Shown here piece by piece: positions 1-12,200 of a stretch of DNA of 64,000 bases. How positions within the stretch are numbered: the first letter of the stretch is position 1; the number at the start of each line of letters is the position of its first letter. The stretch is from Ascidiella aspersa (Eukaryota), in contig OZ004608.1 in assembly GCA_963924565.1 (NCBI GenBank), positions 15,376,001-15,440,000 of the forward strand, given 5' to 3'. The translations under genes and the position numbers were made by a program. Under the pieces are notes generated by a model. It was not told where the DNA came from. It did not search any database and saw nothing but the letters and a program-made list of their open reading frames with translations.

Positions 1-290
1 TTTAACTGTAACATAAGTTTTTATCGCGTTCGAGTACCCCGCCAAAAAACCAAAGCTAATCTACGTAGGTTATAAACTTTGTCCATAACCTGTCTGGAAT
101 AATTCTGGTGGGTACCGTTTTTCGTGCCCCGTGTGTATTTAAACCTGTATAGATTTTTGCATCTGATCGCGGTGAATGAGATGCTTTTTTGCACGTAAAA
201 ATTAATATTAACCCAAAAACAAAATAAGAGTCATATTTCAGTAAATTTTCTGCAAGATGTCTTAGCTGTCTGATAGAGCCAATGTCTTAC

Positions 291-3200
291 GTTGTTTCCG
301 ATTCCAAGCGCGTTTTCCAGTTCTTCCGAAATGCCGTGAAAGTCAATGGCCAAGAGCACAGTGTTGATAACGATGCACAGGATAATAAAGATCTCGAACA
401 CTTTGTGTTTGATTACCTTAAACAAACAAAGATAAGTAAGGCTTAGGACTACTACAAAAGTCGATTATACAAAACTTTTTAAACTAGGGTATATCCACAA
501 ACTTGTGAGTTATTTAAGTACCCGAAAAGTTACAATACTGTTCTGTAGAAGTATCTATTACTTTTTTCCAGTGAATTTTAGTTTTTTTCTTCAATGCCCT
601 TTATCTATTCAACACACACACTAGGCACATTTGTAAGAGCCTGTCGACAATCCCTTGCGTTTAATTTTTCTACAAGTTACTGAAGAAATCCGACTTTTCC
701 AGTAACACGATAGTTAACATACATTCCACCTTATAAATGAAACATAAGCTACACCAGCCTGGATTAGGCCTTTTGGTCTTGCACACAATTTTGGGTATTT
801 CGAGAACTATACCTCGTCGTCGATAATACTATTTCGTAATCCTGACCATGTGATATATTTACCAATATATATATACTCGTTTCTTCCACTTAACGTACCT
901 TTTTCAGTTTCTTTTGAAACTTTTCGAACTTTGGGTGACAAGACCAAGCGCAGAATGTTGTCATGTACCATTCCTTTAACCGTTTTAATCGACCTTCCCA
1001 TTTTCCTATCTCCTTGAGATTAGCTGAAAAAGATAGGTCAGAACAAATAAAAATACCACATAAAAAGTCCAATGGCAATGTTAACGGGCAAAACTAGCTA
1101 AAACACGTTAGTCTCAATCATTTTTTTTTCAAAACTCTAGAACTGGTTGAATAACTAATTTACCACAAAAATACTCAAATCTCAAGCCAAAAGATATTTT
1201 AACGATTTATACTTTATTCGGGTGATTTTCAAACAGGGTCGAAAAAATATTGTGTGCGACGAAAGCTTATTGTATTTTTGGAAATCATTTGTACTAAAAG
1301 TGGGCATACAGGCAAGCATGGAAATCCTAAATGTACAGTATGCATTAAACCAGGGCTGCGTGGTCGGTTAAACAACCCGATTCCGAATCCTGCTAAAAAA
1401 TAAACCCGAGTCCGACTCCTGAGTACCGAGGTCGACTCCGACAAAATGTGCGTTTTTGTCGACTCCGAATCTACAGCCTGTATTTCTTTACGTAACTTAG
1501 GTAAGGTGGATATACAGCAATCCACCCATATAATTTATCCACTCATAACACATGGTTAACAAAATTTCAACCATATAGTCTATTTCACCTTTGCAATTTA
1601 CAGATCCCGGCAATATTAGGTTCGAAATTTCGGACTCGGGACTCTAGTGGTCTTACATGGTCTTACTCGAGTCCCGAGTCAGACTCCAGTACCTTGACTA
1701 CAGTCAAGTCGAGCCAGACATGGCGATTTTAAGCCAACGAATTGAGCCATTGCAGCCCCCTGCTTCCACAAACAAACACGACAGTAGCACGGTGACTTTC
1801 ACCGAGCTTTTAGGATCACAGGATGGAGATTTCCACGCTTAGGAGTTTTATTAAAGCCATTTTTTTTACAAATTTTCACCCCGAAGTCGATTATTACAAC
1901 CTCAAAAATTTACAGTGCACTTACACGACTCGGAGCTGTCCATGGACGCCTGCTTGCCGCTGCTCGAAAACGCACTCTTCTTATTCCGCGGCTCGCCGTT
2001 CTTCTTGGCTTCGTTGCTTTCGACGCCGACCCGTTCGCCGTCGCCGTCGGCCTGATCGCCGCCAGTTGCGGGAGATGCCGCTTTCTTCCGCGCCAAAGCC
2101 ACAATCTCGCCGATCGAGGTTACCGTGGGCGGCTGCTGTCGTTCGGGCGCCACAGAGTTGAGTCGTCTGGTGTTACGCTGCTCCGCCAGCTTTTTCTTGC
2201 GAATCTGTCGTCGCTTGGCTCGCTCCTTGACCTGGGCGCGCTTCTTTTTCATCTCGGTCTGCGTCGACAAGAGATGTTTTAATTTTCTACGTAGGCAAGA
2301 AACTACTGGGAGAAAACTTGGGCCCACACGAATTCGGCTAACGCCGCTAACGGGTAAATTCATGGAATCAGGTGGCACTGTATAAAGACAAATTGTATTG
2401 AGTTATCGACAAGCTTGCGCACAACCGTGCTTCATCAGGTCAAAGTCAAAGTATCTGATACTTTGACCTGATGAAGCACGGTTGTGCGAAAGCTTGTCGA
2501 TAGCTCAACACAATTTGTCTTTATACCGTGTCACCTGATTCCTCTATTTAGAATTAGACACATACGGCGATTTACAAAGATTGGTAAATTCATGTGCGTC
2601 TTGGCGAGAAGCTGAAATACTTTAGCACATGGATAACCGATGGATGGTAGTTTTGGTGGATGGTGGTTTGATCAAGTCACCTATACCGAGGCTTGAATTG
2701 GTATTTTCAGCTACTTGTTTATCAACATTATTAAAAAAGATTTAAAATTTACGAAAATACAGTGATCGTGAGCTATTTAAATGAAAATAAAAACGTTATG
2801 CTTACAACGAATACGTTTTAGTCGTTTTCATTATACAAAAACACAGTGCTTACAATTAAGGCAACGTATCCCGTTCTATCACTACGTATGGTTTATAGTG
2901 CTATCGAACAGTTCAGAAGACACGAAAATCTAATAAGGCTAAAACTTAAGCATTGTTTTACCATTTTGTCGTTTTCCTTTACGTAAGCCAGTGTGACGAC
3001 TGCCAGAAGTAAGTTGAGCAAGTAAAAAGGTCCGAGGAATACCGACATCAAGAAGAAGAGGACGTTCCAAGGTCCTTCGGCTCTGATGATCTGCAATTTA
3101 TTAATTGTTTTACTTTTATATATAGACTGGACTCCATAGGCTAAAATTAATGGAACAGTAACATTGTAACCGTGTAACGTGGTACTGGTACACGGAATTA

Positions 3201-6200
3201 GACCGTAAAGCAATAATATCTAAAGCGAAATTGTCTTTAATACTGTAGTATTAGGACCAACGTCAAAATAAGGCCAAATAAGCGGTAATATTGACGACGA
3301 AATAAGACTTAACAAAACCTAAACCTGTCGGAATATGTCCAAACGTCATTACAATAATTAAATAGACTAAAATGTTATATAAATCTAAAGGGCTTCACAA
3401 CAAAAACTGTTGGGGAAAGGGTGTGGGTGATCGGGGGCCCCCAGCCTGGCAGCGGGCGTTTTGGTATCGACATTTGGGAGCCCCACATAGTTTAAGCGGA
3501 ATCGTTTGGTGTTTTTTGGTGTGTGGGAGGAATCGGATAAAGGAAGAGTTTAGAATTTGAGTCTGGGTTAGTATTATTAAGGGGTTTGGTGGCAAAGTTG
3601 GGGATGAGGGTTAGGGAGAAGGTTCTTCAGATCTGTTTTCGACGGGTAAAGAGTTACTCCGATTTAGAGGTCAGTTTATATAGGTATTGGTTTTATACTG
3701 GTGTTGATCCGACCTTGATGTTACTCAAATTTTGGTTTTATCCGTGTATAACAAATATAGTAAAACTCTGTTTTGAACTGTATCTTTAAAAAACGGAAGT
3801 TCTTCATCACATTCTTTATTATGGGAAAATATATGCTATTGTGTCGAACGATCAAACCATGTTGATGTCGCCAGTTAAACTATATGACAGCACATTAATC
3901 ATCTGTTCGTTACAAAGCCAGCGAGATGAATCAACTTTTAGAAACATATTCGGTTTCTACAGGCGTGAAAAGCCGATGGCCATCTACGCTTTGTTGTGAC
4001 AGGGAGTGAACGCATTCAGACAAGTACCTTTTCATTCAAAAGTAACCTATGTTGGGGGAAACTGCCGACTGGAGGCAGAAACAGCGGTATTTGATTTCGA
4101 CGCTATTGTTTCACATGGCATTTCTGGCGTACGAAAAACGAAAATTAGTTTAGAAATCGGTTGAAGCTTCCACCCCTACGCCTACAACAGGTTTATAAAC
4201 GTAGCAAACAGGACAAGGTTAAACCATAGGCAAAACACAAAGTTGCATTTTCTGTCTTTGCCAAATGCCCCCGCTGCGCCGCGAATATGTTTTGTCCCAC
4301 AGCAAGATGTAAAAACTCTAGCTTTCGAGCGTGTTATCGAATGGAACAATGAATACACGACTGTCATCTCGCAAATCGTTCTTTGTTCGGCGGTTTTCCT
4401 AAAATTACAGACATACCTATACAAATTTTACAAATGATCTTAGGAACCGTTCACACGGCAGACATAAAAAGTAGCACTTCATACCTGCAGATTTGTTATT
4501 ACTTTGATGCACGAAATGACTCGTTAAGTATTTTAAAATTAAGGATGTATGATTGATTACAAAACGTGTCTAGTATTTATGATAAATTGCGCAATATGAC
4601 TCCATCAGCAAAGCAGTTGTTTCGTACCATTTAGTTTAGTTTCTGAGTATTTCCTAAAGGACGCATATTTTATCCTTATATTTTGAAAACGAGCCACATT
4701 ATGACAACTTTAAATTTATTGTAATTGTTCGTATAAAATACCGATGCTTTGAGACGCTTATCTTCGGTAGCCCTAGTTACTGACGTCAACTATTGTTATA
4801 CAGATTAATTAGACGATAGTACATTGAACTAAATAGTTGACTACGGAAAATTCAATCTACTATACAATGTGTGCCGTGTTTGTTGGTCAGTACGACTCCA
4901 GAAGGGCTTGATCACAGCATACACTGTGCATATGAACGTTTCAGTAACATTGAATCAACAAACAGTTTACACAATCCCTTTAACACCTATTTGGCATTGA
5001 ATGAACATTGGACATCGATCACCGTGGTTAGTATAACAATACGACAGCAACGCTTTGTAATCCAGTCACTCACCATGTTGTAAACGTTTTCCCAGAAGTC
5101 GAGTGTGAGAAGTTGGAGCGAGGTAAGAAGAGCGTAGCCCATGTGATCGAAGTTGGTGTGGCCGTAGTTGGGGTTGGGGCCGACATCAGGCAAGCATATG
5201 TAACCGGCCGGACAGATTCTGGACAAAGCAATTTTGGCAATTTTCGGGCATGTCATTTAAATGCTAATAGTCTCCATTTATTGTCATGTTTTGCGTTTAT
5301 GTGTCTATACGCTCTAAACGGTACTTTGGTTTTCGTTGGACCAAAATAATTGTCCTCACTAAGCTTTACTGGTTTGTTGCATCCTGGCCTACTGGTATGT
5401 TTAAAAATAGATACTAGTTTAACTAAAGTATAATTATTTGGGTTCGGGTCAATAACGTCGGACTGTGGTTATTAAATGTTGATTTATTTTAATAAAAAAA
5501 CAAAATGGATTCAGCCTGACGGGAGTATAAGGGTATTGCACATATTAACGCCCAATTACACAAAATTCATTAGGTCTTGTTATATTTCTATTACCAAGGT
5601 TGGATATTACGGTGAAACTGGCAAAGCGAAGTATTCAAATAACGAAATTACAACAAAAAGGCTCTTGACAGCGGGGAGTACGAACGGGAGGTTTAACGAT
5701 GTGCCAACTAACCGGACCGACAGGTTCTTCATTTAGAATGCCTGTGCCTCATCTGCTTTGTTATCGTACAAGCGTTCCCACCGAACGCCATTGTCTTGCC
5801 GAACAAAGCTTGTCGGATATCGGGCGCACCGGATTTTATTTCATGAACTAAAAGTTGCGCTACTGGAGATGATTAAACGCCGGTCTATGACTAAAAATGT
5901 TCGAGAGGCGGAGTTTTCCCGAAGGTGTACAACGACAAATAGATTTTGCGTACCCGCTTCCGGTTGCGTTGCCACAAACAACTTGCTCGCCCTCCACAGG
6001 ATTCCAATTCACTTGAAAAATAAATGAGAAACATCACAGTGCTGTACATTCAACGAATTTCCATCCTTAACGTAGGAATACTGTTTAGTGTATATATATA
6101 AAGGACATATGTTGACAAATAAAGGCATAACGCCGGGCGAAAAGGCTCTCATCATGTTCCCGTTTACTGTTAACGCAAAACAGCCAGGACGGATACCACG

Positions 6201-9200
6201 GTATGAATTATACAAGAGGCTAGAGCGTGAACCCCGGTTAAAAATGACCTTTTAAAAAAGCAAAATTCAAGCCACATCTATCTTTTTTCGGGTAAGTGTC
6301 GGATTATGACTCAAAGCGCAAGGCGTTTGCCCTTGCCGATCAGGCACGTTGCCTGCCCTGAAAGCGCTGACTGGTCCAGTCAAAACTCGAACAAATAGCG
6401 ACCAGCCGCCAGTAACCGAGACGGGTATGAATAATTAAAGCAAAATTAATGAAGAAGTTTCCAAGCGCTGTTGGCTTTTTATTAGACGGCGCGCGGTGAA
6501 GGTCTAGGCAAAATAAAAAGGTGCATAATTTGCCGTCGCCGTCCGTTCAAGCATTGTTTTATTTTTTCATTTTAATTATGCAACTTGCAGTTGCGAAAGA
6601 GGCCTAATAACTGTGCGTACTTGGGTTGTGTGTGTAGTTGAAGTATGCGGCGTCGGACATGTTGGCCGGGTAGACAACACAGCGCCGCTGCAGCACCCCC
6701 TGGTATGCCTGAAGAGCGATGAGGGCCACCACGAATAGGAGAAAGAGCATAATCAACAGGACCTCGGCGAGCGGCTTCATGGAGTATAAGAGCGCGTTCA
6801 CGATGGTCCGCAAGCCTGTAACATTCGCGATTGGTTAGCGCTCGGCCGTTCGCGCACGTCAATCACACAACAACGTGGCCATATCCTACCCTCAAACTGT
6901 GTTTTTTGCCTATTTTAATTATTTAAATGCAAAATTTCTAATAGTTTCTAGGATTCTTACCATATTAAAAAAAATGTTTTAGCCCAAAAGCGTCGTGCGT
7001 CCCATCGCCCCCTCGAAAATAGAAGTCTAGGCAACTTAAACGGTATAAGGGCGTTTTGCCCTATACGCGAATCTATAACCTCCTATAGCAGTGGTTCTTA
7101 ACCTTTTTTGTTCTCGCGACCCCTTTTAAGTTTTCGATAACTTTCGCGACCCCCTAATTATGGTGTATGATAAAACCTGAGTAAATAAAAAACACATTTT
7201 AAAATTGGGAAAATTCGAATACGAAAAAATATAGACTAGGATTGTATCAAAATTTGGCTAAAATGTGCTATGCACATTGCACAACAAGCTAAAGTTACGG
7301 TTTGAGCCAGCAGGGTTGTCAGATGATCGGTTAAATATTAGGACACTGTTGGTGTGAAATTCAGATATTTTAGGTCAAATAATATTAAGCATGTACCTAG
7401 TGCAAGACTAAAGAGAATCAATGGAGGTAACAGTTCTTGGTGAGCAGCCAAAATTCCTTACAAATTTACAAAAAAAACGGTTAGTCGTTAACGGTAGTCC
7501 AATAATAAAGCTTTCTGTAAATACTATTTCCTTTTGCTAAAACGGCAACACCAAAATGTTATTACCGGAATTCTGTTGATGTTTTAGAAAAGGCTATGTA
7601 AAAGTTATGATACCGCTGGCAAGTAGAAATACTTTGCCTGTCACCTATTGTAAACCTAGCACAAATTTTATTGTAATTTGGCCTAAATTTAAATTTGGTA
7701 CCAAAGTGCCCTATACTACACCTGAAGCTTTTATGCTGCACAGAAAAATTGTCGAAATACGCCACATAATCGCGCTAAGCGAAAATTTTTTGATTTTTGT
7801 GGTAAAGTTGGTAAAAACAATTTTGGAGGCCTCTTGAGCCCGTGGATTTACTTCCCACAAAGTTTCAAATAAATTCGGCCAAATAGAACAGAAAGCTTAC
7901 TGTCCTAATAATTTAAAAACCGCCGGACGCAGCAGTTAAATTAAGACAATTTATCGTTTTGGCCCCAATTTTGTAATTGTGAAGTCATAAACGCGACAGG
8001 TTCACTGCAGCAAAAGCCACACAAAGACAAATGGTAGACTGGCGTTGCTTTTGTGCATTCTATACTGCTAAATTTTTGGTTCATATTGCTTGTTTCTTAT
8101 GAAGTTTTTCTTTATCAAACACTACACGGCGACCCCCTCAGACAACCTCGTGCGACCCTCTTGGGGGTCGCGACCCCCAGGTTGAGAACCACTGTCCTAT
8201 AGCTTTTTTTTTTTGAGGTACTATAGCTTTTGTACCTGTTCAATCTACAACTATATAACGAAAATACGAACTGTGTGGTGTTAAAAAGGTTAGTTTTCAT
8301 GAGGTCACGTGTAGATAACTTTATGACGTCACATGTTGACGTCACTTTGTAGCGTTACGTTATATCGCTTTGTGATGTCATCTCTGAAAAAAATTGTCAT
8401 GCCCCCCACCCCCAAAAAATAATGTTTCAATTAGTTACCATTTAATATTGTGGCAAAAGCTATGTTTACTTTAAAACTATTTCTTTCGTCAAACCAACTC
8501 GAACAATACTGGTCATTAATGTTTGAATTTGTTTTGGATTTAAATTGTTAAAACCATAACTGTTGAATCAATTAATATGAATTTGCAAAGAATTTTGTTA
8601 GATTTCCCACAATGAAAAGTAAAAGGTTTTTAAATAAAAATAATAATCGGGCGAAACACTTACAAAATCACATATACGTGTGGTGTAACAGCCGCTAATT
8701 TGATTGTTTTTAAGTGGGTCACTTCTGATTAAAAACGTTATTGGCGTTATACCTTTACGCGGCTAATTAGCTGCTTCACCCTTAATGGAATGGTCAGTGA
8801 AGCGAAAAATCTGCGGCTACAGGCATAAAGTTCAACCACAAATTACAAATGACCCAAACACTAATTTATTGACGCTTTAACAAGTTAAAAGCTTGATCAA
8901 TTTCTGCAAAGGAATTAAAAAGTTTCAGCATTTTATATATTGGATCACAAATGTTTTTAGACTTTTGTCAAAATAAAGATATCAGCAAAATATGATCAAA
9001 GGTAGAATCGTCAGATACCCGGTATATCGATATGTATTTAATACGTATTTGATAAGAATTGTAACAATACACATTTACCTGGAACTATGGCCACTGATTT
9101 TACCGCTCGTAGAACACGAATAGCTCTTAGACTAGATACGTCCGATGACCCAGTAATTGTTGCGTACCTGCAATATGAAGTGGTATATTAATGAATGAAT

Positions 9201-12200
9201 GAACAATTGCTAGAATTCCGGTGACATTTCCTTCAGGAATTAGGCCATCGATTATGGATTGCGAAGGGTAAAAAATGAATGGCGCAAGAACGATTCAAAT
9301 CTGCTAAAAATGTACTGATGTGTATCTTCCATTTAAGTTCGATATATTTTATCCAACGTTATTCTATACACTTAGGATGCCTTTATCAGCAATTGTAACA
9401 ACACCATGCAAATTAAAGCAAAACAAAGCACAAATAAAATGTTTTTAGTCACGTTTAACTAATTACGAAACAATATTGCAACTGAATTGCTAACTAAATA
9501 GGTCAGTACATAATGGCGGGTCCAGGGAGGTGCACCAGGCCATGGCCGCCGAAACTATATTTTTTGTCAGGTTGTGCAATGTTAAACAAAATTATTTGAA
9601 TCATTTTCTAATGCTTTTGTCTATTTCAAGAAAATACATAGAGCCTAAAGGCCACAAACTCTATCTGTTAAAAAAGAAAAAATATATATTGTACTTTCCA
9701 GCAATATCGAATCGAATGTATTTTTGTGCCTAATGCATAACGCCAATATAAGCTGTTTGCTTTTAACATTAACTAAATTCACTAAAAAGTAACAAAAAAA
9801 AAAAAAAAAAAAAACTAAAAAAAGTAACACTTTTCATATTATAGTTGACTGTATCTTGGATTGCGAAATGCTTACAATACTCAAATTTGGAATGTACTTG
9901 AAAAGTTTGGAAGAATATGTAGCATAATTTATAGAATGAAGTGTTAACGCCTTGGCAGTAATCCTTATTATGGTATTTACGTAGGTAGGACAAGGGGATT
10001 TTTCGTGGAACATCTTAGCGTTCAGGTGTCAATTCCCAATGACATAGTTTAACACAGCCGAATTTAATCAGTCAGTCAACGACAGTGTGCTTAGTCGGAA
10101 TGCACGACACGCTATATGAGTTCTGAAAGAAAACGTTTATTATAACTTGTTAGATAACTAAGAAAAATTAAACTTACGCTACGATTACAACGGCGAAATC
10201 CAGCCAGTTCCACGGGTCTCGTATATAAGTGAACTTCCCCATGATAAGGCCTCTGGCTGACACTTTGATAATCACCTCCACTGTGTAAAACGCGGTGAAG
10301 AAATATCTAAATCAAACATCGAAACACATAAATTAAAATATCCAAATTAAGTGAGAACCTAGTTTGTGCATCGATATTGTTACTATATTGTGACTAGAGC
10401 ACTTCTACGTGCAACATCGGTCAATGGGTGATAGTTGGGTCTATACGGGAGGTCTGTACATTTGTACGATTATACGCAAATTTATTACATTTTATCGAAT
10501 ATCGAAAGCACTTTTATTTACACAAACAGTAGTACAACAAAAATGTCAATACATATGTAGTATATAAAGGTTTTTTTTTAGTTTTTTAGATTTGTAAAAC
10601 TCAGTTGTTGACAAATGAAGGTCCGAGAACACCTACTCGGCATTTGTAATTTCATTGTCCAGTGCCAAAAATACGCAGTTGATGAGAATAGCAATCAACA
10701 CAACGATATCGAACAACCTGAAACAAGAAAACATTGAACGCTGTCAGCTTTTTTGCCGATTACTTCAAGTTTAAATAAACTTGTCTATACCCACGACACT
10801 TCAAACTCATGTAAATGACAAGGGGTTCCTAAGTTTAATCTACCTTAAATGTTATAACATAGATACAATAGCCTTGAATTGTCAGCTGTGTTCGATGTTG
10901 ACCTTATAGTCTTATTGTGGCCTAGCCGATACTCACGAGTGCAGGGCAATTCTTATGGCGAGGTGTCTCAGCTTGTGAAAAGGCGACAAGACAAATAAAA
11001 CGTTGGACGCGGAAAATCGGAACAAACGATCGCGGTTGAAGCGACGTGTGACGACACAGAAAGTCTGAAATGCAAAAAGTGTCAATCCAGTTAACGGGAA
11101 CAATCACACCATATCCAATGGTGTTCATTTTAGAACCTTAGCGTCAACTATGGATGCTTGGTACATCGAATTTTATTCAGTTGCAGCAGAAAAAACAACA
11201 ACACTTTTATCCAATGAAGTTTACAACCAACAAAATGTCGAGCTTTTGCCGTACCATCAAATAAACGACTTTTAACATAAATAAAATATTTATGCTAATC
11301 TTGAAAATACAACAAAATTAAAAGGTTAACGAAATACGACAATTTCTATACTTCTATGGATAAATGTTTAACATTGAAAATGGCTATACTTTACGGCAAC
11401 CGGAAAGTCAGGAGTCTAGCGGAGTCCCTAAAATAGTGAACGCGGATAAAATATTGCAAAACATTTAATTAGGAAATGCTAGGATGTGGGATTGTAGATT
11501 GTCACAATTAAGTCAAGTCATATTGTTGGTTAAACGCCTTGCCCTGCATTGCTGTAATTGTGCATTAGCTACATTCTATCATTTTAATCGACATCGAATC
11601 ATTTCAGAAACTTTTTTTTTAAATGTAAAAATATAAATGGTAATGGTAATAGGCATAAATGAGTTAACGTCGAATTTGTGAAAGTTTTGGCTGCATGCTG
11701 TAATTTCAATTTTAGGGCTACGTTGCTAATCCCTTAAACGGATTTGATAGTAGTCCCACATTCCATCTTCGAAATTCCAGGAGCATAAATTAAATCCCTA
11801 CAGTGATGAACCATATGTCAGCTCTTTTTTTTTCAGAAAACAAAGGGCATTTCCATGTCTTCTGATTTGTTTGTAGCAATTTTTTTCCCAGCGCTTTGTT
11901 CCTGTTGTACATTGTTACAATGGGCCAAGGCGCCAACGGTTGTTTGTGTAAGCAAGTCGGAGGCATGTACAAAGGCATTTCCATTGATAACATTAAGCGG
12001 GGTATTCACACCGCTGTCTGATATTGTCAGTGGAACAAGGTGACGAGCGAAATATTATCGAAACAGCGGACTACTGCATCATTAAAGAAATGACTAAAGC
12101 CATGACAAACTTATCGCGCATTTTGTTATTTCAGCATGTTGCGTAAAAAGACTTCTACCGCGAGATAATATTTTCAGGCCGCCAAAAAAAAATGCACCTA

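What the first reader, a model, noticed from the sequence alone, without database searches (positions are those of the whole stretch)
2353..2594. Head-to-head hammerhead ribozyme pair in a TSD-flanked hairpin inside a Nav intron
Seen: a palindrome of about 180 bp with a one-sided tail, flanked by a 12-bp direct repeat. The right arm reads CTGATGA-A-stem II (GCAC/GTGC)-GAAA-GCTT-GTC with stem I TTGAC/GTCGA. Known: minimal type I hammerheads with a palindromic stem III, which can act as dimers, are hallmarks of Penelope-like element pLTRs, and pLTRs often occur in inverted arrangement. Inference: this is a tiny non-coding, ribozyme-bearing retro-mobilised unit (PLE remnant or retrozyme-like family) with no RT ORF nearby.
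Basis: partly seen in the sequence, partly recalled or inferred. Interest (0 to 1): 0.8.

Follow-up and report, generated by a model that had tools for sequence, protein, structure and literature searches.

The report
Two-armed Penelope retrotransposon tail with hammerheads
The hairpin is a dead, gene-less end fragment of a Penelope-like retrotransposon, inserted in that element class's known inverted two-armed form, and it carries the class's usual small hammerhead-ribozyme motif, so it is real but ordinary.

Summary
Window 2365-2582 is a 218-bp insert flanked by an exact 12-bp duplication. It has two inverted arms, a 40-nt tail on one side only, and a minimal type I hammerhead motif on each arm.

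It is not a self-standing mini-element. The right arm plus tail is the last ~125 nt of a Penelope-like element (PLE). Longer copies elsewhere in this genome encode reverse transcriptase plus a GIY-YIG endonuclease about 185 nt upstream of the same hammerhead. The left arm is an inverted copy that starts 40 nt further in.

The literature already describes each part of this layout:
- severe 5' truncation, an adjoining inverted copy and a one-sided 30-40-bp tail (PMC8557442);
- two reverse-transcription start sites and extension of both cut strands (PMC11167929);
- minimal hammerheads, including pairs on opposite strands (PMC4209133).

The plus-strand motif is intact. The copy on the channel gene's pre-mRNA strand has a core change (GCAA). 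Either transcript would fold into a hairpin of about -140 kcal/mol, far more stable than the ribozyme fold. RNA reads showed no cleavage ends, no circles and no expression of this locus.

Earlier follow-ups of this scan reached the same reading on other DNA of this genome. One small addition: arm inner ends cluster 6-20 nt upstream of the hammerhead.

The parts
2353..2364 (.). Left copy of the 12-bp target-site duplication GGTAAATTCATG
   Evidence: Exact direct repeat. Similarity to other genomic copies starts right after it. Other copies have their own duplications of 10-15 bp.
2365..2454 (-). Left arm: inverted, tail-less copy of the PLE 3' end (PLE sense strand is the window's minus strand). 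It starts at the inner of the two start points and ends about 10 nt upstream of the hammerhead. It holds a 6-nt slip duplication (AAGTCA).
   Evidence: Inverted repeat with 2458-2542. Aligns to the family and to the 3' end of RT/GIY-YIG copies.
2406..2443 (-). Hammerhead motif on the minus strand, which is the pre-mRNA strand of the channel gene. Position 13 of the core is changed (GCAA instead of GAAA; G2417 on the plus strand). The would-be cut lies between 2411 and 2410.
   Evidence: Sequence. Family copies and most family reads have T at 2417. My descriptor fails on it only for this reason.
2455..2457 (.). Junction of the two arms (CTG, centre T2456). Both arms end at the same template position (ATAC, 10 nt before CUGAUGA).
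   Evidence: Sequence. Junction letters differ among 24 loci with exact cores.
2458..2542 (+). Right arm: 5'-truncated PLE 3' end in sense orientation.
   Evidence: Aligns with the 3' untranslated region of L041/L033/L035/L036 downstream of the RT-GIY-YIG ORF.
2463..2500 (+). Intact minimal type I hammerhead motif: stem I 2463-2467/2496-2500, core CUGAUGA 2468-2474, extra A 2475, helix II 2476-2487, GAA 2488-2490, A15.1-G-C-U16.1 2491-2494, U17 2495 (predicted cut after 2495). It is antisense to the host gene.
   Evidence: Sequence. Descriptor hit against 0.04 expected. The 31-nt core occurs 1029 times in the genome and 0 times for the reversed control. The isolated 44-mer folds into stems I + II as its minimum-energy structure, -10 kcal/mol.
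2543..2582 (+). One-sided 40-nt 'tail': the stretch between the two start points of reverse transcription. It ends ...ACAAAGATT with no poly(A).
   Evidence: Present on one arm only here, in all 22 aligned copies and in five of the six distinct two-armed insertions of the sample fetched without regard to layout, plus L051; in the sixth neither arm matched the tail. Matches the published PLE tail (PMC8557442, PMC11167929).
2583..2594 (.). Right copy of the target-site duplication

Best explanation
Window 2365-2582 is one old insertion of an endonuclease-bearing Penelope-like retrotransposon (PLE), cut down to its last ~125 nt and laid down in the class's two-armed inverted form.

Inferred mechanism, from the published in-vitro work and from the anatomy here. 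The PLE protein nicked both strands of the target 12 bp apart, which produced the duplication. DNA synthesis was primed from both nicks on PLE RNA. One priming used the outer start point, giving the arm with the 40-nt tail. The other used the inner start point 40 nt upstream, giving the tail-less arm. Both cDNAs stopped at the same place, about 10 nt upstream of the hammerhead, and were joined head to head.

The hammerhead motifs are passengers. The motif sits about 185 nt behind the stop codon and 87 nt before the element's 3' end, so any tail fragment of that length carries it, once per arm and on opposite strands.

The copy has no coding capacity and no visible transcript of its own. One motif is mutated. 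Any transcript holding both arms would fold into an 83-bp hairpin rather than the ribozyme.

Shown: the anatomy, the family membership, the link to RT/GIY-YIG copies, the variable duplications and the independent junctions. Inferred: the double priming, and the lack of ribozyme activity at this locus.
For: - Family size: about 2051 first-look candidates; all 40 scored match at 77-96% over exactly the stretch between the duplications.
- 22 aligned copies have their own target duplications of 10-15 bp, no poly(A), and the tail on one side only.
- GIY-YIG hits lie about 240 nt upstream of the same hammerhead core at six or more loci.
- L041 has a 453-aa ORF with RVT_1 (E 9e-9) and GIY-YIG (E 2e-7).
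- The 3' untranslated region, hammerhead and tail of these copies align base for base with window 2458-2582.
- Arms of about 140 nt to about 2 kb occur in the same inverted layout.
- 24 loci with exact cores 12-42 nt apart have almost all different junction letters, so they are independent events.
- In L013 and L020 the two arms carry different subfamily blocks, which fits two RNA templates rather than snap-back.
- The literature describes the same layout (PMC8557442), double-strand extension with two start sites that define the tail (PMC11167929), and minimal hammerheads including pairs on opposite strands (PMC4209133).
- Folding: hairpin -142 / -137 kcal/mol against -9 to -10 for the ribozyme fold.
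- DNA contigs of two other runs hold both junctions at full flank depth.
Against: - No complete, intact copy of this PLE family was found. The N-terminal part of the ORF occurs at 74% identity or more in only two places, and the longest arm I read (about 2 kb, L051) is itself truncated.
- Double priming is taken from an Anolis element in vitro, not shown for this family.
- Rfam's hammerhead models do not match the motif even at E <= 10, so the ribozyme call rests on the published minimal descriptor and on my own scan.
- Among copies the hammerhead is no better conserved than the rest of the arm: 0.94-0.96 against 0.93-0.96.
Confidence: 0.9

Rival explanations
1. A non-autonomous, ribozyme-bearing mini-element (retrozyme-like or SINE-like) of about 220 bp that is transcribed and mobilised as a unit, possibly through circular RNA made by hammerhead cleavage.
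For: Many copies have almost the same size. About 90% of hammerhead cores lack the sequence 31-61 nt upstream (1029 against 100), so short copies dominate. A recent preprint derives animal retrozymes from PLE pLTRs.
Against: Junctions differ between copies, and arm lengths form a series up to about 2 kb. There is no tandem arrangement at the locus. Among the RNA reads, none of the 15 of 90 joints that the tool listed is a back-joint, and no pile-up of ends at 2495/2496 was reported. The top BLAST hits were selected for resembling the query, which explains the uniform size.
Confidence: 0.05
2. A foldback or MITE-type DNA transposon with long terminal inverted repeats.
For: A long inverted repeat flanked by a direct repeat.
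Against: The duplications vary from 10 to 15 bp. A 40-nt tail lies outside the inverted repeat on one side only. The sequence is the 3' end of an RT/GIY-YIG retroelement. Single-armed copies are common.
Confidence: 0.01
3. The insert has been taken over by the host as a hairpin-RNA source (small interfering RNA or microRNA-like) or as an intronic regulator of the channel gene. The ribozyme on the pre-mRNA strand would have been inactivated because cleavage would be harmful.
For: An 83-bp near-perfect hairpin at about -140 kcal/mol on either strand. Generic matches to long microRNA-precursor models. The only core mutation of the two motifs lies on the gene's sense strand.
Against: The Rfam matches are far below the gathering scores (59 against 180 bits) and reflect only hairpin shape. 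One substitution in an arm that has about 6% divergence from its partner is what neutral decay would give. No locus-specific RNA reads were found. No small-RNA data were available.
Confidence: 0.04

Closest known systems
Canonical endonuclease-bearing Penelope-like elements (Penelope/Poseidon, Neptune, Nematis) and their 5'-truncated, inverted, one-side-tailed insertions (Craig et al. 2021, PMC8557442; Frangieh et al. 2024, PMC11167929)
   Same: A single ORF with RT followed by a C-terminal GIY-YIG. Heavy 5' truncation, an adjoining inverted truncated copy, a 40-nt tail at one end only, variable target duplications, no poly(A), and a hammerhead in the repeat or tail region.
   Different: In the Anolis element the hammerhead overlaps the ORF start. 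Here it lies about 185 nt behind the stop codon of the preceding unit and 87 nt before the 3' end. No full-length or tandem (pLTR-ORF-pLTR) copy of this family was recovered, and the PLE clade was not determined.
Minimal PLE hammerheads (min-HHR) of Cervera and de la Pena 2014 (PMC4209133)
   Same: [quoted passage not shown] Pairs on opposite strands and mostly solitary motifs from truncated PLEs are reported there too.
   Different: Helix II is 4 bp here, against the 6-8 bp described for the Schistosoma and Drosophila examples. Activity was not tested here.
Metazoan non-LTR retrozymes (tandem hammerhead repeats that give circular RNAs)
   Same: A type I hammerhead with weak helix III. Probable PLE ancestry or mobilisation (preprint 10.64898/2026.07.22.740005).
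   Different: At this locus there is no tandem unit and no unit-length RNA, and no circle joint appeared among the joints the tool listed. The two motifs face each other on opposite strands.

Membership tests
Penelope-like element (EN+), truncated insertion | Sequence continuity with copies that encode RT plus a C-terminal GIY-YIG endonuclease in one ORF | tested here: met
   The L041 ORF of 453 aa matches RVT_1 and GIY-YIG. Its 3' end aligns with window 2458-2582. GIY-YIG hits lie about 240 nt upstream of the core at six or more loci.
Penelope-like element (EN+), truncated insertion | Insertion signature: 5' truncation, an adjoining inverted 5'-truncated copy, and a 30-40-bp tail at one end only | tested here: met
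   Window anatomy. 22 copies selected by similarity, five of the six distinct two-armed insertions in a sample taken without regard to layout, and L051, all have the tail on one arm only. In the sixth sampled insertion neither arm matched the tail.
Penelope-like element (EN+), truncated insertion | Target-primed insertion: target duplications of variable length, no poly(A) | tested here: met
   Duplications of 10-15 bp read off the alignment; elements end ...ACAAAGAT(T).
Penelope-like element (EN+), truncated insertion | Tandem or pseudo-LTR organisation of full-length copies | tested here: inconclusive
   No full-length copy was recovered.
Minimal PLE hammerhead (Cervera and de la Pena 2014) | Core C3-U-G-A-N-G8-A9, G12-A-A14, A15.1/U16.1, H17 not G | tested here: met
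   Met on the plus strand at 2468-2495. Not met by the minus-strand copy (GCAA).
Minimal PLE hammerhead (Cervera and de la Pena 2014) | Extra nucleotide between 9 and 10.1; G10.1-C11.1 pair; palindromic 15.2-16.2 / loop 3 | tested here: met
   A2475; G2476-C2487; AGCU 2491-2494. The feature list is taken from PMC4209133. Two other families met in fetched loci (L056, L063) share these features with different helices I and II.
Minimal PLE hammerhead (Cervera and de la Pena 2014) | Self-cleavage (as a dimer or with protein help) | not testable with these tools
   RNA reads show no pile-up of ends at 2495/2496. The same was reported for the Anolis element.
Canonical hammerhead families of Rfam | Match to a curated covariance model | tested here: not met
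   No hammerhead model matched at the gathering score over 64 kb or at E <= 10 over 2340-2610. This is expected for a motif without helix III.
Non-LTR retrozyme | Tandem head-to-tail units, each with a hammerhead, yielding circular RNA | tested here: not met
   The inverted repeat at the locus is not tandem. No back-joint appears among the 15 of 90 joints the tool listed from the RNA run.

The most novel reading that the evidence does not exclude
The inner ends of the arms are not random. In a sample of 20 loci taken without regard to layout, 9 of 24 arm ends fall 6-20 nt upstream of CUGAUGA. Genome-wide, the core 31-mer occurs 1029 times, while the 31-mer lying 31-61 nt upstream occurs 100 times and one at the stop codon 47 times. 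In the window both arms stop at the same base.

This would fit a discrete short template RNA of about 125 nt that begins just upstream of the hammerhead, for example at a transcription start inside the pseudo-LTR, where an initiator-like TCATTT lies. If reverse transcription starts at the first tail it meets on such an RNA, it would run off after 90-125 nt and give these mini-insertions as 'strong-stop'-like products. That would tie the PLE promoter, the position of the hammerhead at the very 5' end of the RNA, and internal initiation into one picture. The three tandem 46-nt hammerhead units in L031 would then be repeated jumps from that 5' end.
Probability: 0.3. Interest if true: 0.45.

Novelty: new member of a known kind. 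Interest (0 to 1): 0.15.

Why it matters
It matters little in itself. It is one more decayed tail fragment of a PLE in an intron, of a kind described in 2014-2024 and already met several times by this scan in the same genome.

Its use is practical. Such hairpins should be annotated as PLE remnants, not as ribozyme genes, microRNA precursors or foldback transposons.

The family-wide clustering of arm ends just upstream of the hammerhead is a cheap lead on where PLE template RNAs begin.

Tried and rejected
- Rfam at gathering score over the whole window and at E <= 10 over the element: no hammerhead model matched. The only hits were generic long-hairpin matches to microRNA precursor models, far below their cut-offs, and I rejected them as shape effects.
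- L031 and L032 were fetched as possible full-length two-armed PLEs because hammerheads face each other 8 kb apart. They hold no ORF of 150 aa or more. They are 1.4-3.1-kb inverted segmental duplications that happen to carry a small insertion.
- Identity of arms within a copy against between copies (0.93 against 0.91) does not discriminate. I therefore dropped the claim that the window's two arms can be shown to come from one template.
- Conservation of the hammerhead against the rest of the arm among copies shows no difference, so within-family conservation gives no evidence for or against function.
- The ViennaRNA dimer fold did not return the expected extended helix III, so I make no claim from it.
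I did not try to get round it.
The organism's name is coded and I did not pursue it.

Full report
**What is there**

Arms 2364-2446 and 2460-2542 are 94% complementary. The exact 12-bp repeat GGTAAATTCATG lies at 2353-2364 and 2583-2594. A 40-nt stretch (2543-2582) is present on the right side only. Allowing for a 6-nt slip duplication in the left arm, the palindrome runs to a single central base, T2456, and both arms end at the same template position.

The right arm reads, on the plus strand:
- stem I at 2463-2467 / 2496-2500;
- CUGAUGA at 2468-2474;
- an unpaired A at 2475;
- helix II GCAC/GUGC with loop GGUU at 2476-2487;
- GAA at 2488-2490;
- the palindromic A-G-C-U at 2491-2494;
- U17 at 2495.

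The mirror copy on the minus strand has GCAA in place of GAAA (G2417 on the plus strand). A descriptor I wrote for minimal hammerheads finds exactly this one motif in the 64 kb on both strands, against 0.04 expected in block shuffles. Rfam's curated hammerhead models do not match it, either at gathering score or at E <= 10. In that mode only generic long-hairpin matches to microRNA precursors appear, far below their cut-offs.

**It is a repeat family with retrotransposon-type ends**

The 242-bp stretch has about 2051 first-look candidates in the 308.6-Mb assembly. All 40 that were scored match at 77-96% from query position 12-14 to 229-231, which is exactly the stretch between the two copies of the duplication.

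In an alignment of 22 copies with flanks:
- each copy has its own flanking duplication of 10-15 bp;
- the element ends ...ACAAAGAT(T) without poly(A);
- the 40-nt tail is always on one side only;
- the centre of the hairpin differs in length and letters from copy to copy.

The 31-nt hammerhead core occurs 517 + 512 times with up to 2 mismatches, and 0 times for the reversed control.

**It is the tail of a Penelope-like element**

Notes from earlier follow-ups in this genome suggested truncated PLE tails, and I tested that.
- A GIY-YIG (PF01541) search of the genome gave hits that lie about 240 nt upstream of the same core at six or more loci.
- L041 carries a 453-aa ORF with RVT_1 and GIY-YIG, preceded after a frameshift by a 138-aa N-terminal piece.
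- The alignment shows that the stop codon is followed by about 185 nt of untranslated sequence, then the hammerhead, then 87 nt to the 3' end. Window 2458-2582 matches this base for base.
- L033, L035, L036 and L051 show the same inverted layout with arms of 140 nt to about 2 kb and their own duplications.

RT plus a C-terminal GIY-YIG in one ORF defines canonical endonuclease-bearing PLEs (PMC8557442).

**The layout is the published PLE insertion signature**

- Craig et al. 2021 describe high 5' truncation, an inverted 5'-truncated copy immediately adjacent, a 30-40-bp tail often at only one end, and hammerheads in the pseudo-LTRs.
- Frangieh et al. 2024 show in vitro that a PLE protein cleaves and extends both DNA strands. 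Reverse transcription starts at two adjacent internal sites, and the tail is the stretch between them. Hammerhead mutants insert as well as wild type, and RNA-seq shows no ends at the cleavage site.
[quoted passage not shown] All are met here. They already note pairs of motifs 100-700 bp apart on opposite strands, and mostly solitary motifs from truncated PLEs.

**How this copy most likely arose (inference)**

- Staggered nicks 12 bp apart produced the duplication.
- One nick primed at the outer start point, giving the arm with the tail.
- The other nick primed at the inner start point 40 nt upstream, giving the tail-less arm.
- Both cDNAs ended about 10 nt upstream of the hammerhead and were joined.

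Three observations favour two separately primed arms over snap-back of a single cDNA:
- The tail asymmetry holds in five of the six distinct two-armed insertions of the sample taken without regard to layout, and in L051. In the sixth, neither arm matched the tail.
- Junctions differ in 24 loci with exact cores.
- Two copies (L013, L020) have arms that carry different subfamily blocks.

**Function at this locus**

- The insert lies between minus-strand exons that match Ion_trans (3213-2893 and 425-231, with 5256-4987 and 6813-6604 further up). It is therefore inside a four-domain cation-channel gene, probably about 100 nt upstream of the next exon.
- The pore-loop sequence (…TLDFWEN…) fits a sodium channel from my own knowledge. 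I did not test that further.
- The intact motif is antisense to the gene, and the sense-strand motif is mutated.
- Either transcript folds into an 83-bp hairpin at -142 / -137 kcal/mol, while the ribozyme fold of the isolated 44-mer is worth -9 to -10.
- In the one RNA run available (raw reads, about 6% sampled) no read lies on the flanks. The 397 reads on the element come from the family: only 12 are 99% or more identical, and they lie on both strands.
- Some of these reads continue into the PLE's 3' untranslated region, so longer copies are transcribed.
- No place where molecules begin or end was reported, and none of the 15 joints listed (of 90) is a circle-type joint.
- Contigs of two DNA runs hold both junctions at the depth of the flanks, so no empty site was seen.

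**What I add**

Arm ends are clustered.
- In 20 loci taken in genome order from the zero-mismatch core list, 9 of 24 arm ends fall 6-20 nt upstream of CUGAUGA.
- 31-mer probes give 1029 hits for the core, 100 for the stretch 31-61 nt upstream and 47 for the stop-codon region.
- Caveat: divergent older subfamilies lower the upstream counts. In the sample, about 30% of arms reach that far, not 10%.

A discrete short template RNA starting just upstream of the hammerhead would explain this. The RNA run gives no support for such a start, but it is a standard cDNA library at low depth. I leave it as the most novel reading that is not excluded.

**Limits**

- No full-length copy of the family was recovered.
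- The PLE clade, the organism and ribozyme activity remain undetermined.

**Verdict**

It is an ordinary member of a known kind, and the scan had found the same thing before on other DNA of this genome.

Noticed in passing
G000 genome-wide; L037 and L052-L070: Inner (5') ends of PLE arms cluster 6-20 nt upstream of the hammerhead's CUGAUGA: 9 of 24 arms in a sample taken without regard to layout. 31-mer counts are 1029 (core), 100 (31-61 nt upstream) and 47 (stop-codon region). An initiator-like TCATTT lies 14 nt upstream. This may mark the 5' end of a short template RNA.
   Followed up: partly
L031 1986-2212 (G000:C2:28621485-28621711), minus strand: One insertion flanked by the duplication GCTAACTA holds three head-to-tail 46-nt units. 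Each unit is a whole hammerhead, running from 7 nt upstream of CUGAUGA to 11 nt past the cut site. Next to them is an inverted arm that bears the tail and has no hammerhead. This looks like repeated template jumps. The whole lies at the edge of a 3.1-kb inverted segmental duplication (2215-5340 against 6923-10000, 95.6%).
   Followed up: partly
L013 and L020 (alignment): The two arms of one insertion carry different subfamily blocks just 3' of the hammerhead (GAGTTATC against GGTTCTC / GAATTCTC). The arms were therefore probably copied from two different RNA molecules.
   Followed up: no
L063 1688-1780 (minus) and L056 2652-2687 (minus): Two other minimal-hammerhead families turned up by chance in fetched loci. 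One has the U3:A8 core (UUGAAAA) and is itself in head-to-head form. The other has CUGAAGA and a longer helix II. Both have the extra nucleotide after A9, a G-C closing pair, a palindromic ACGU and U17.
   Followed up: no
G000:C1:15312968-15313381 and G000:C2:21779432-21779795: The N-terminal part of this PLE family's ORF is found at 74% identity or more in only two places, against about 1000 hammerhead tails. Long copies are very rare, and none read here is intact (frameshift in L041/L051).
   Followed up: partly
window 231-425, 2893-3213, 4987-5256, 6604-6813 (minus strand): These are consecutive Ion_trans exon pieces of a four-domain channel gene. The ORF 1902-2378 (minus) encodes a lysine/arginine-rich stretch that may be the domain I-II linker exon. 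The RNA run X3 has zero reads over 1800-2363 and 2599-3200, so the gene is not seen in that sample.
   Followed up: partly
window 2364-2542, both strands: In E-value mode Rfam reports MIR5998 (59 bits against a cut-off of 180), MIR439 and other microRNA precursors. These are shape matches to any long hairpin and could mislead automatic annotation.
   Followed up: yes
L053 / L054, L060 / L062 and L061 / L063 (G000:C1 2.45/2.46 Mb; 5.99/6.06 Mb; 6.01/6.15 Mb): Pairs of loci 11-145 kb apart carry identical PLE fragments with identical alignment ends. They are probably segmental duplications, which inflate copy counts of the family.
   Followed up: no
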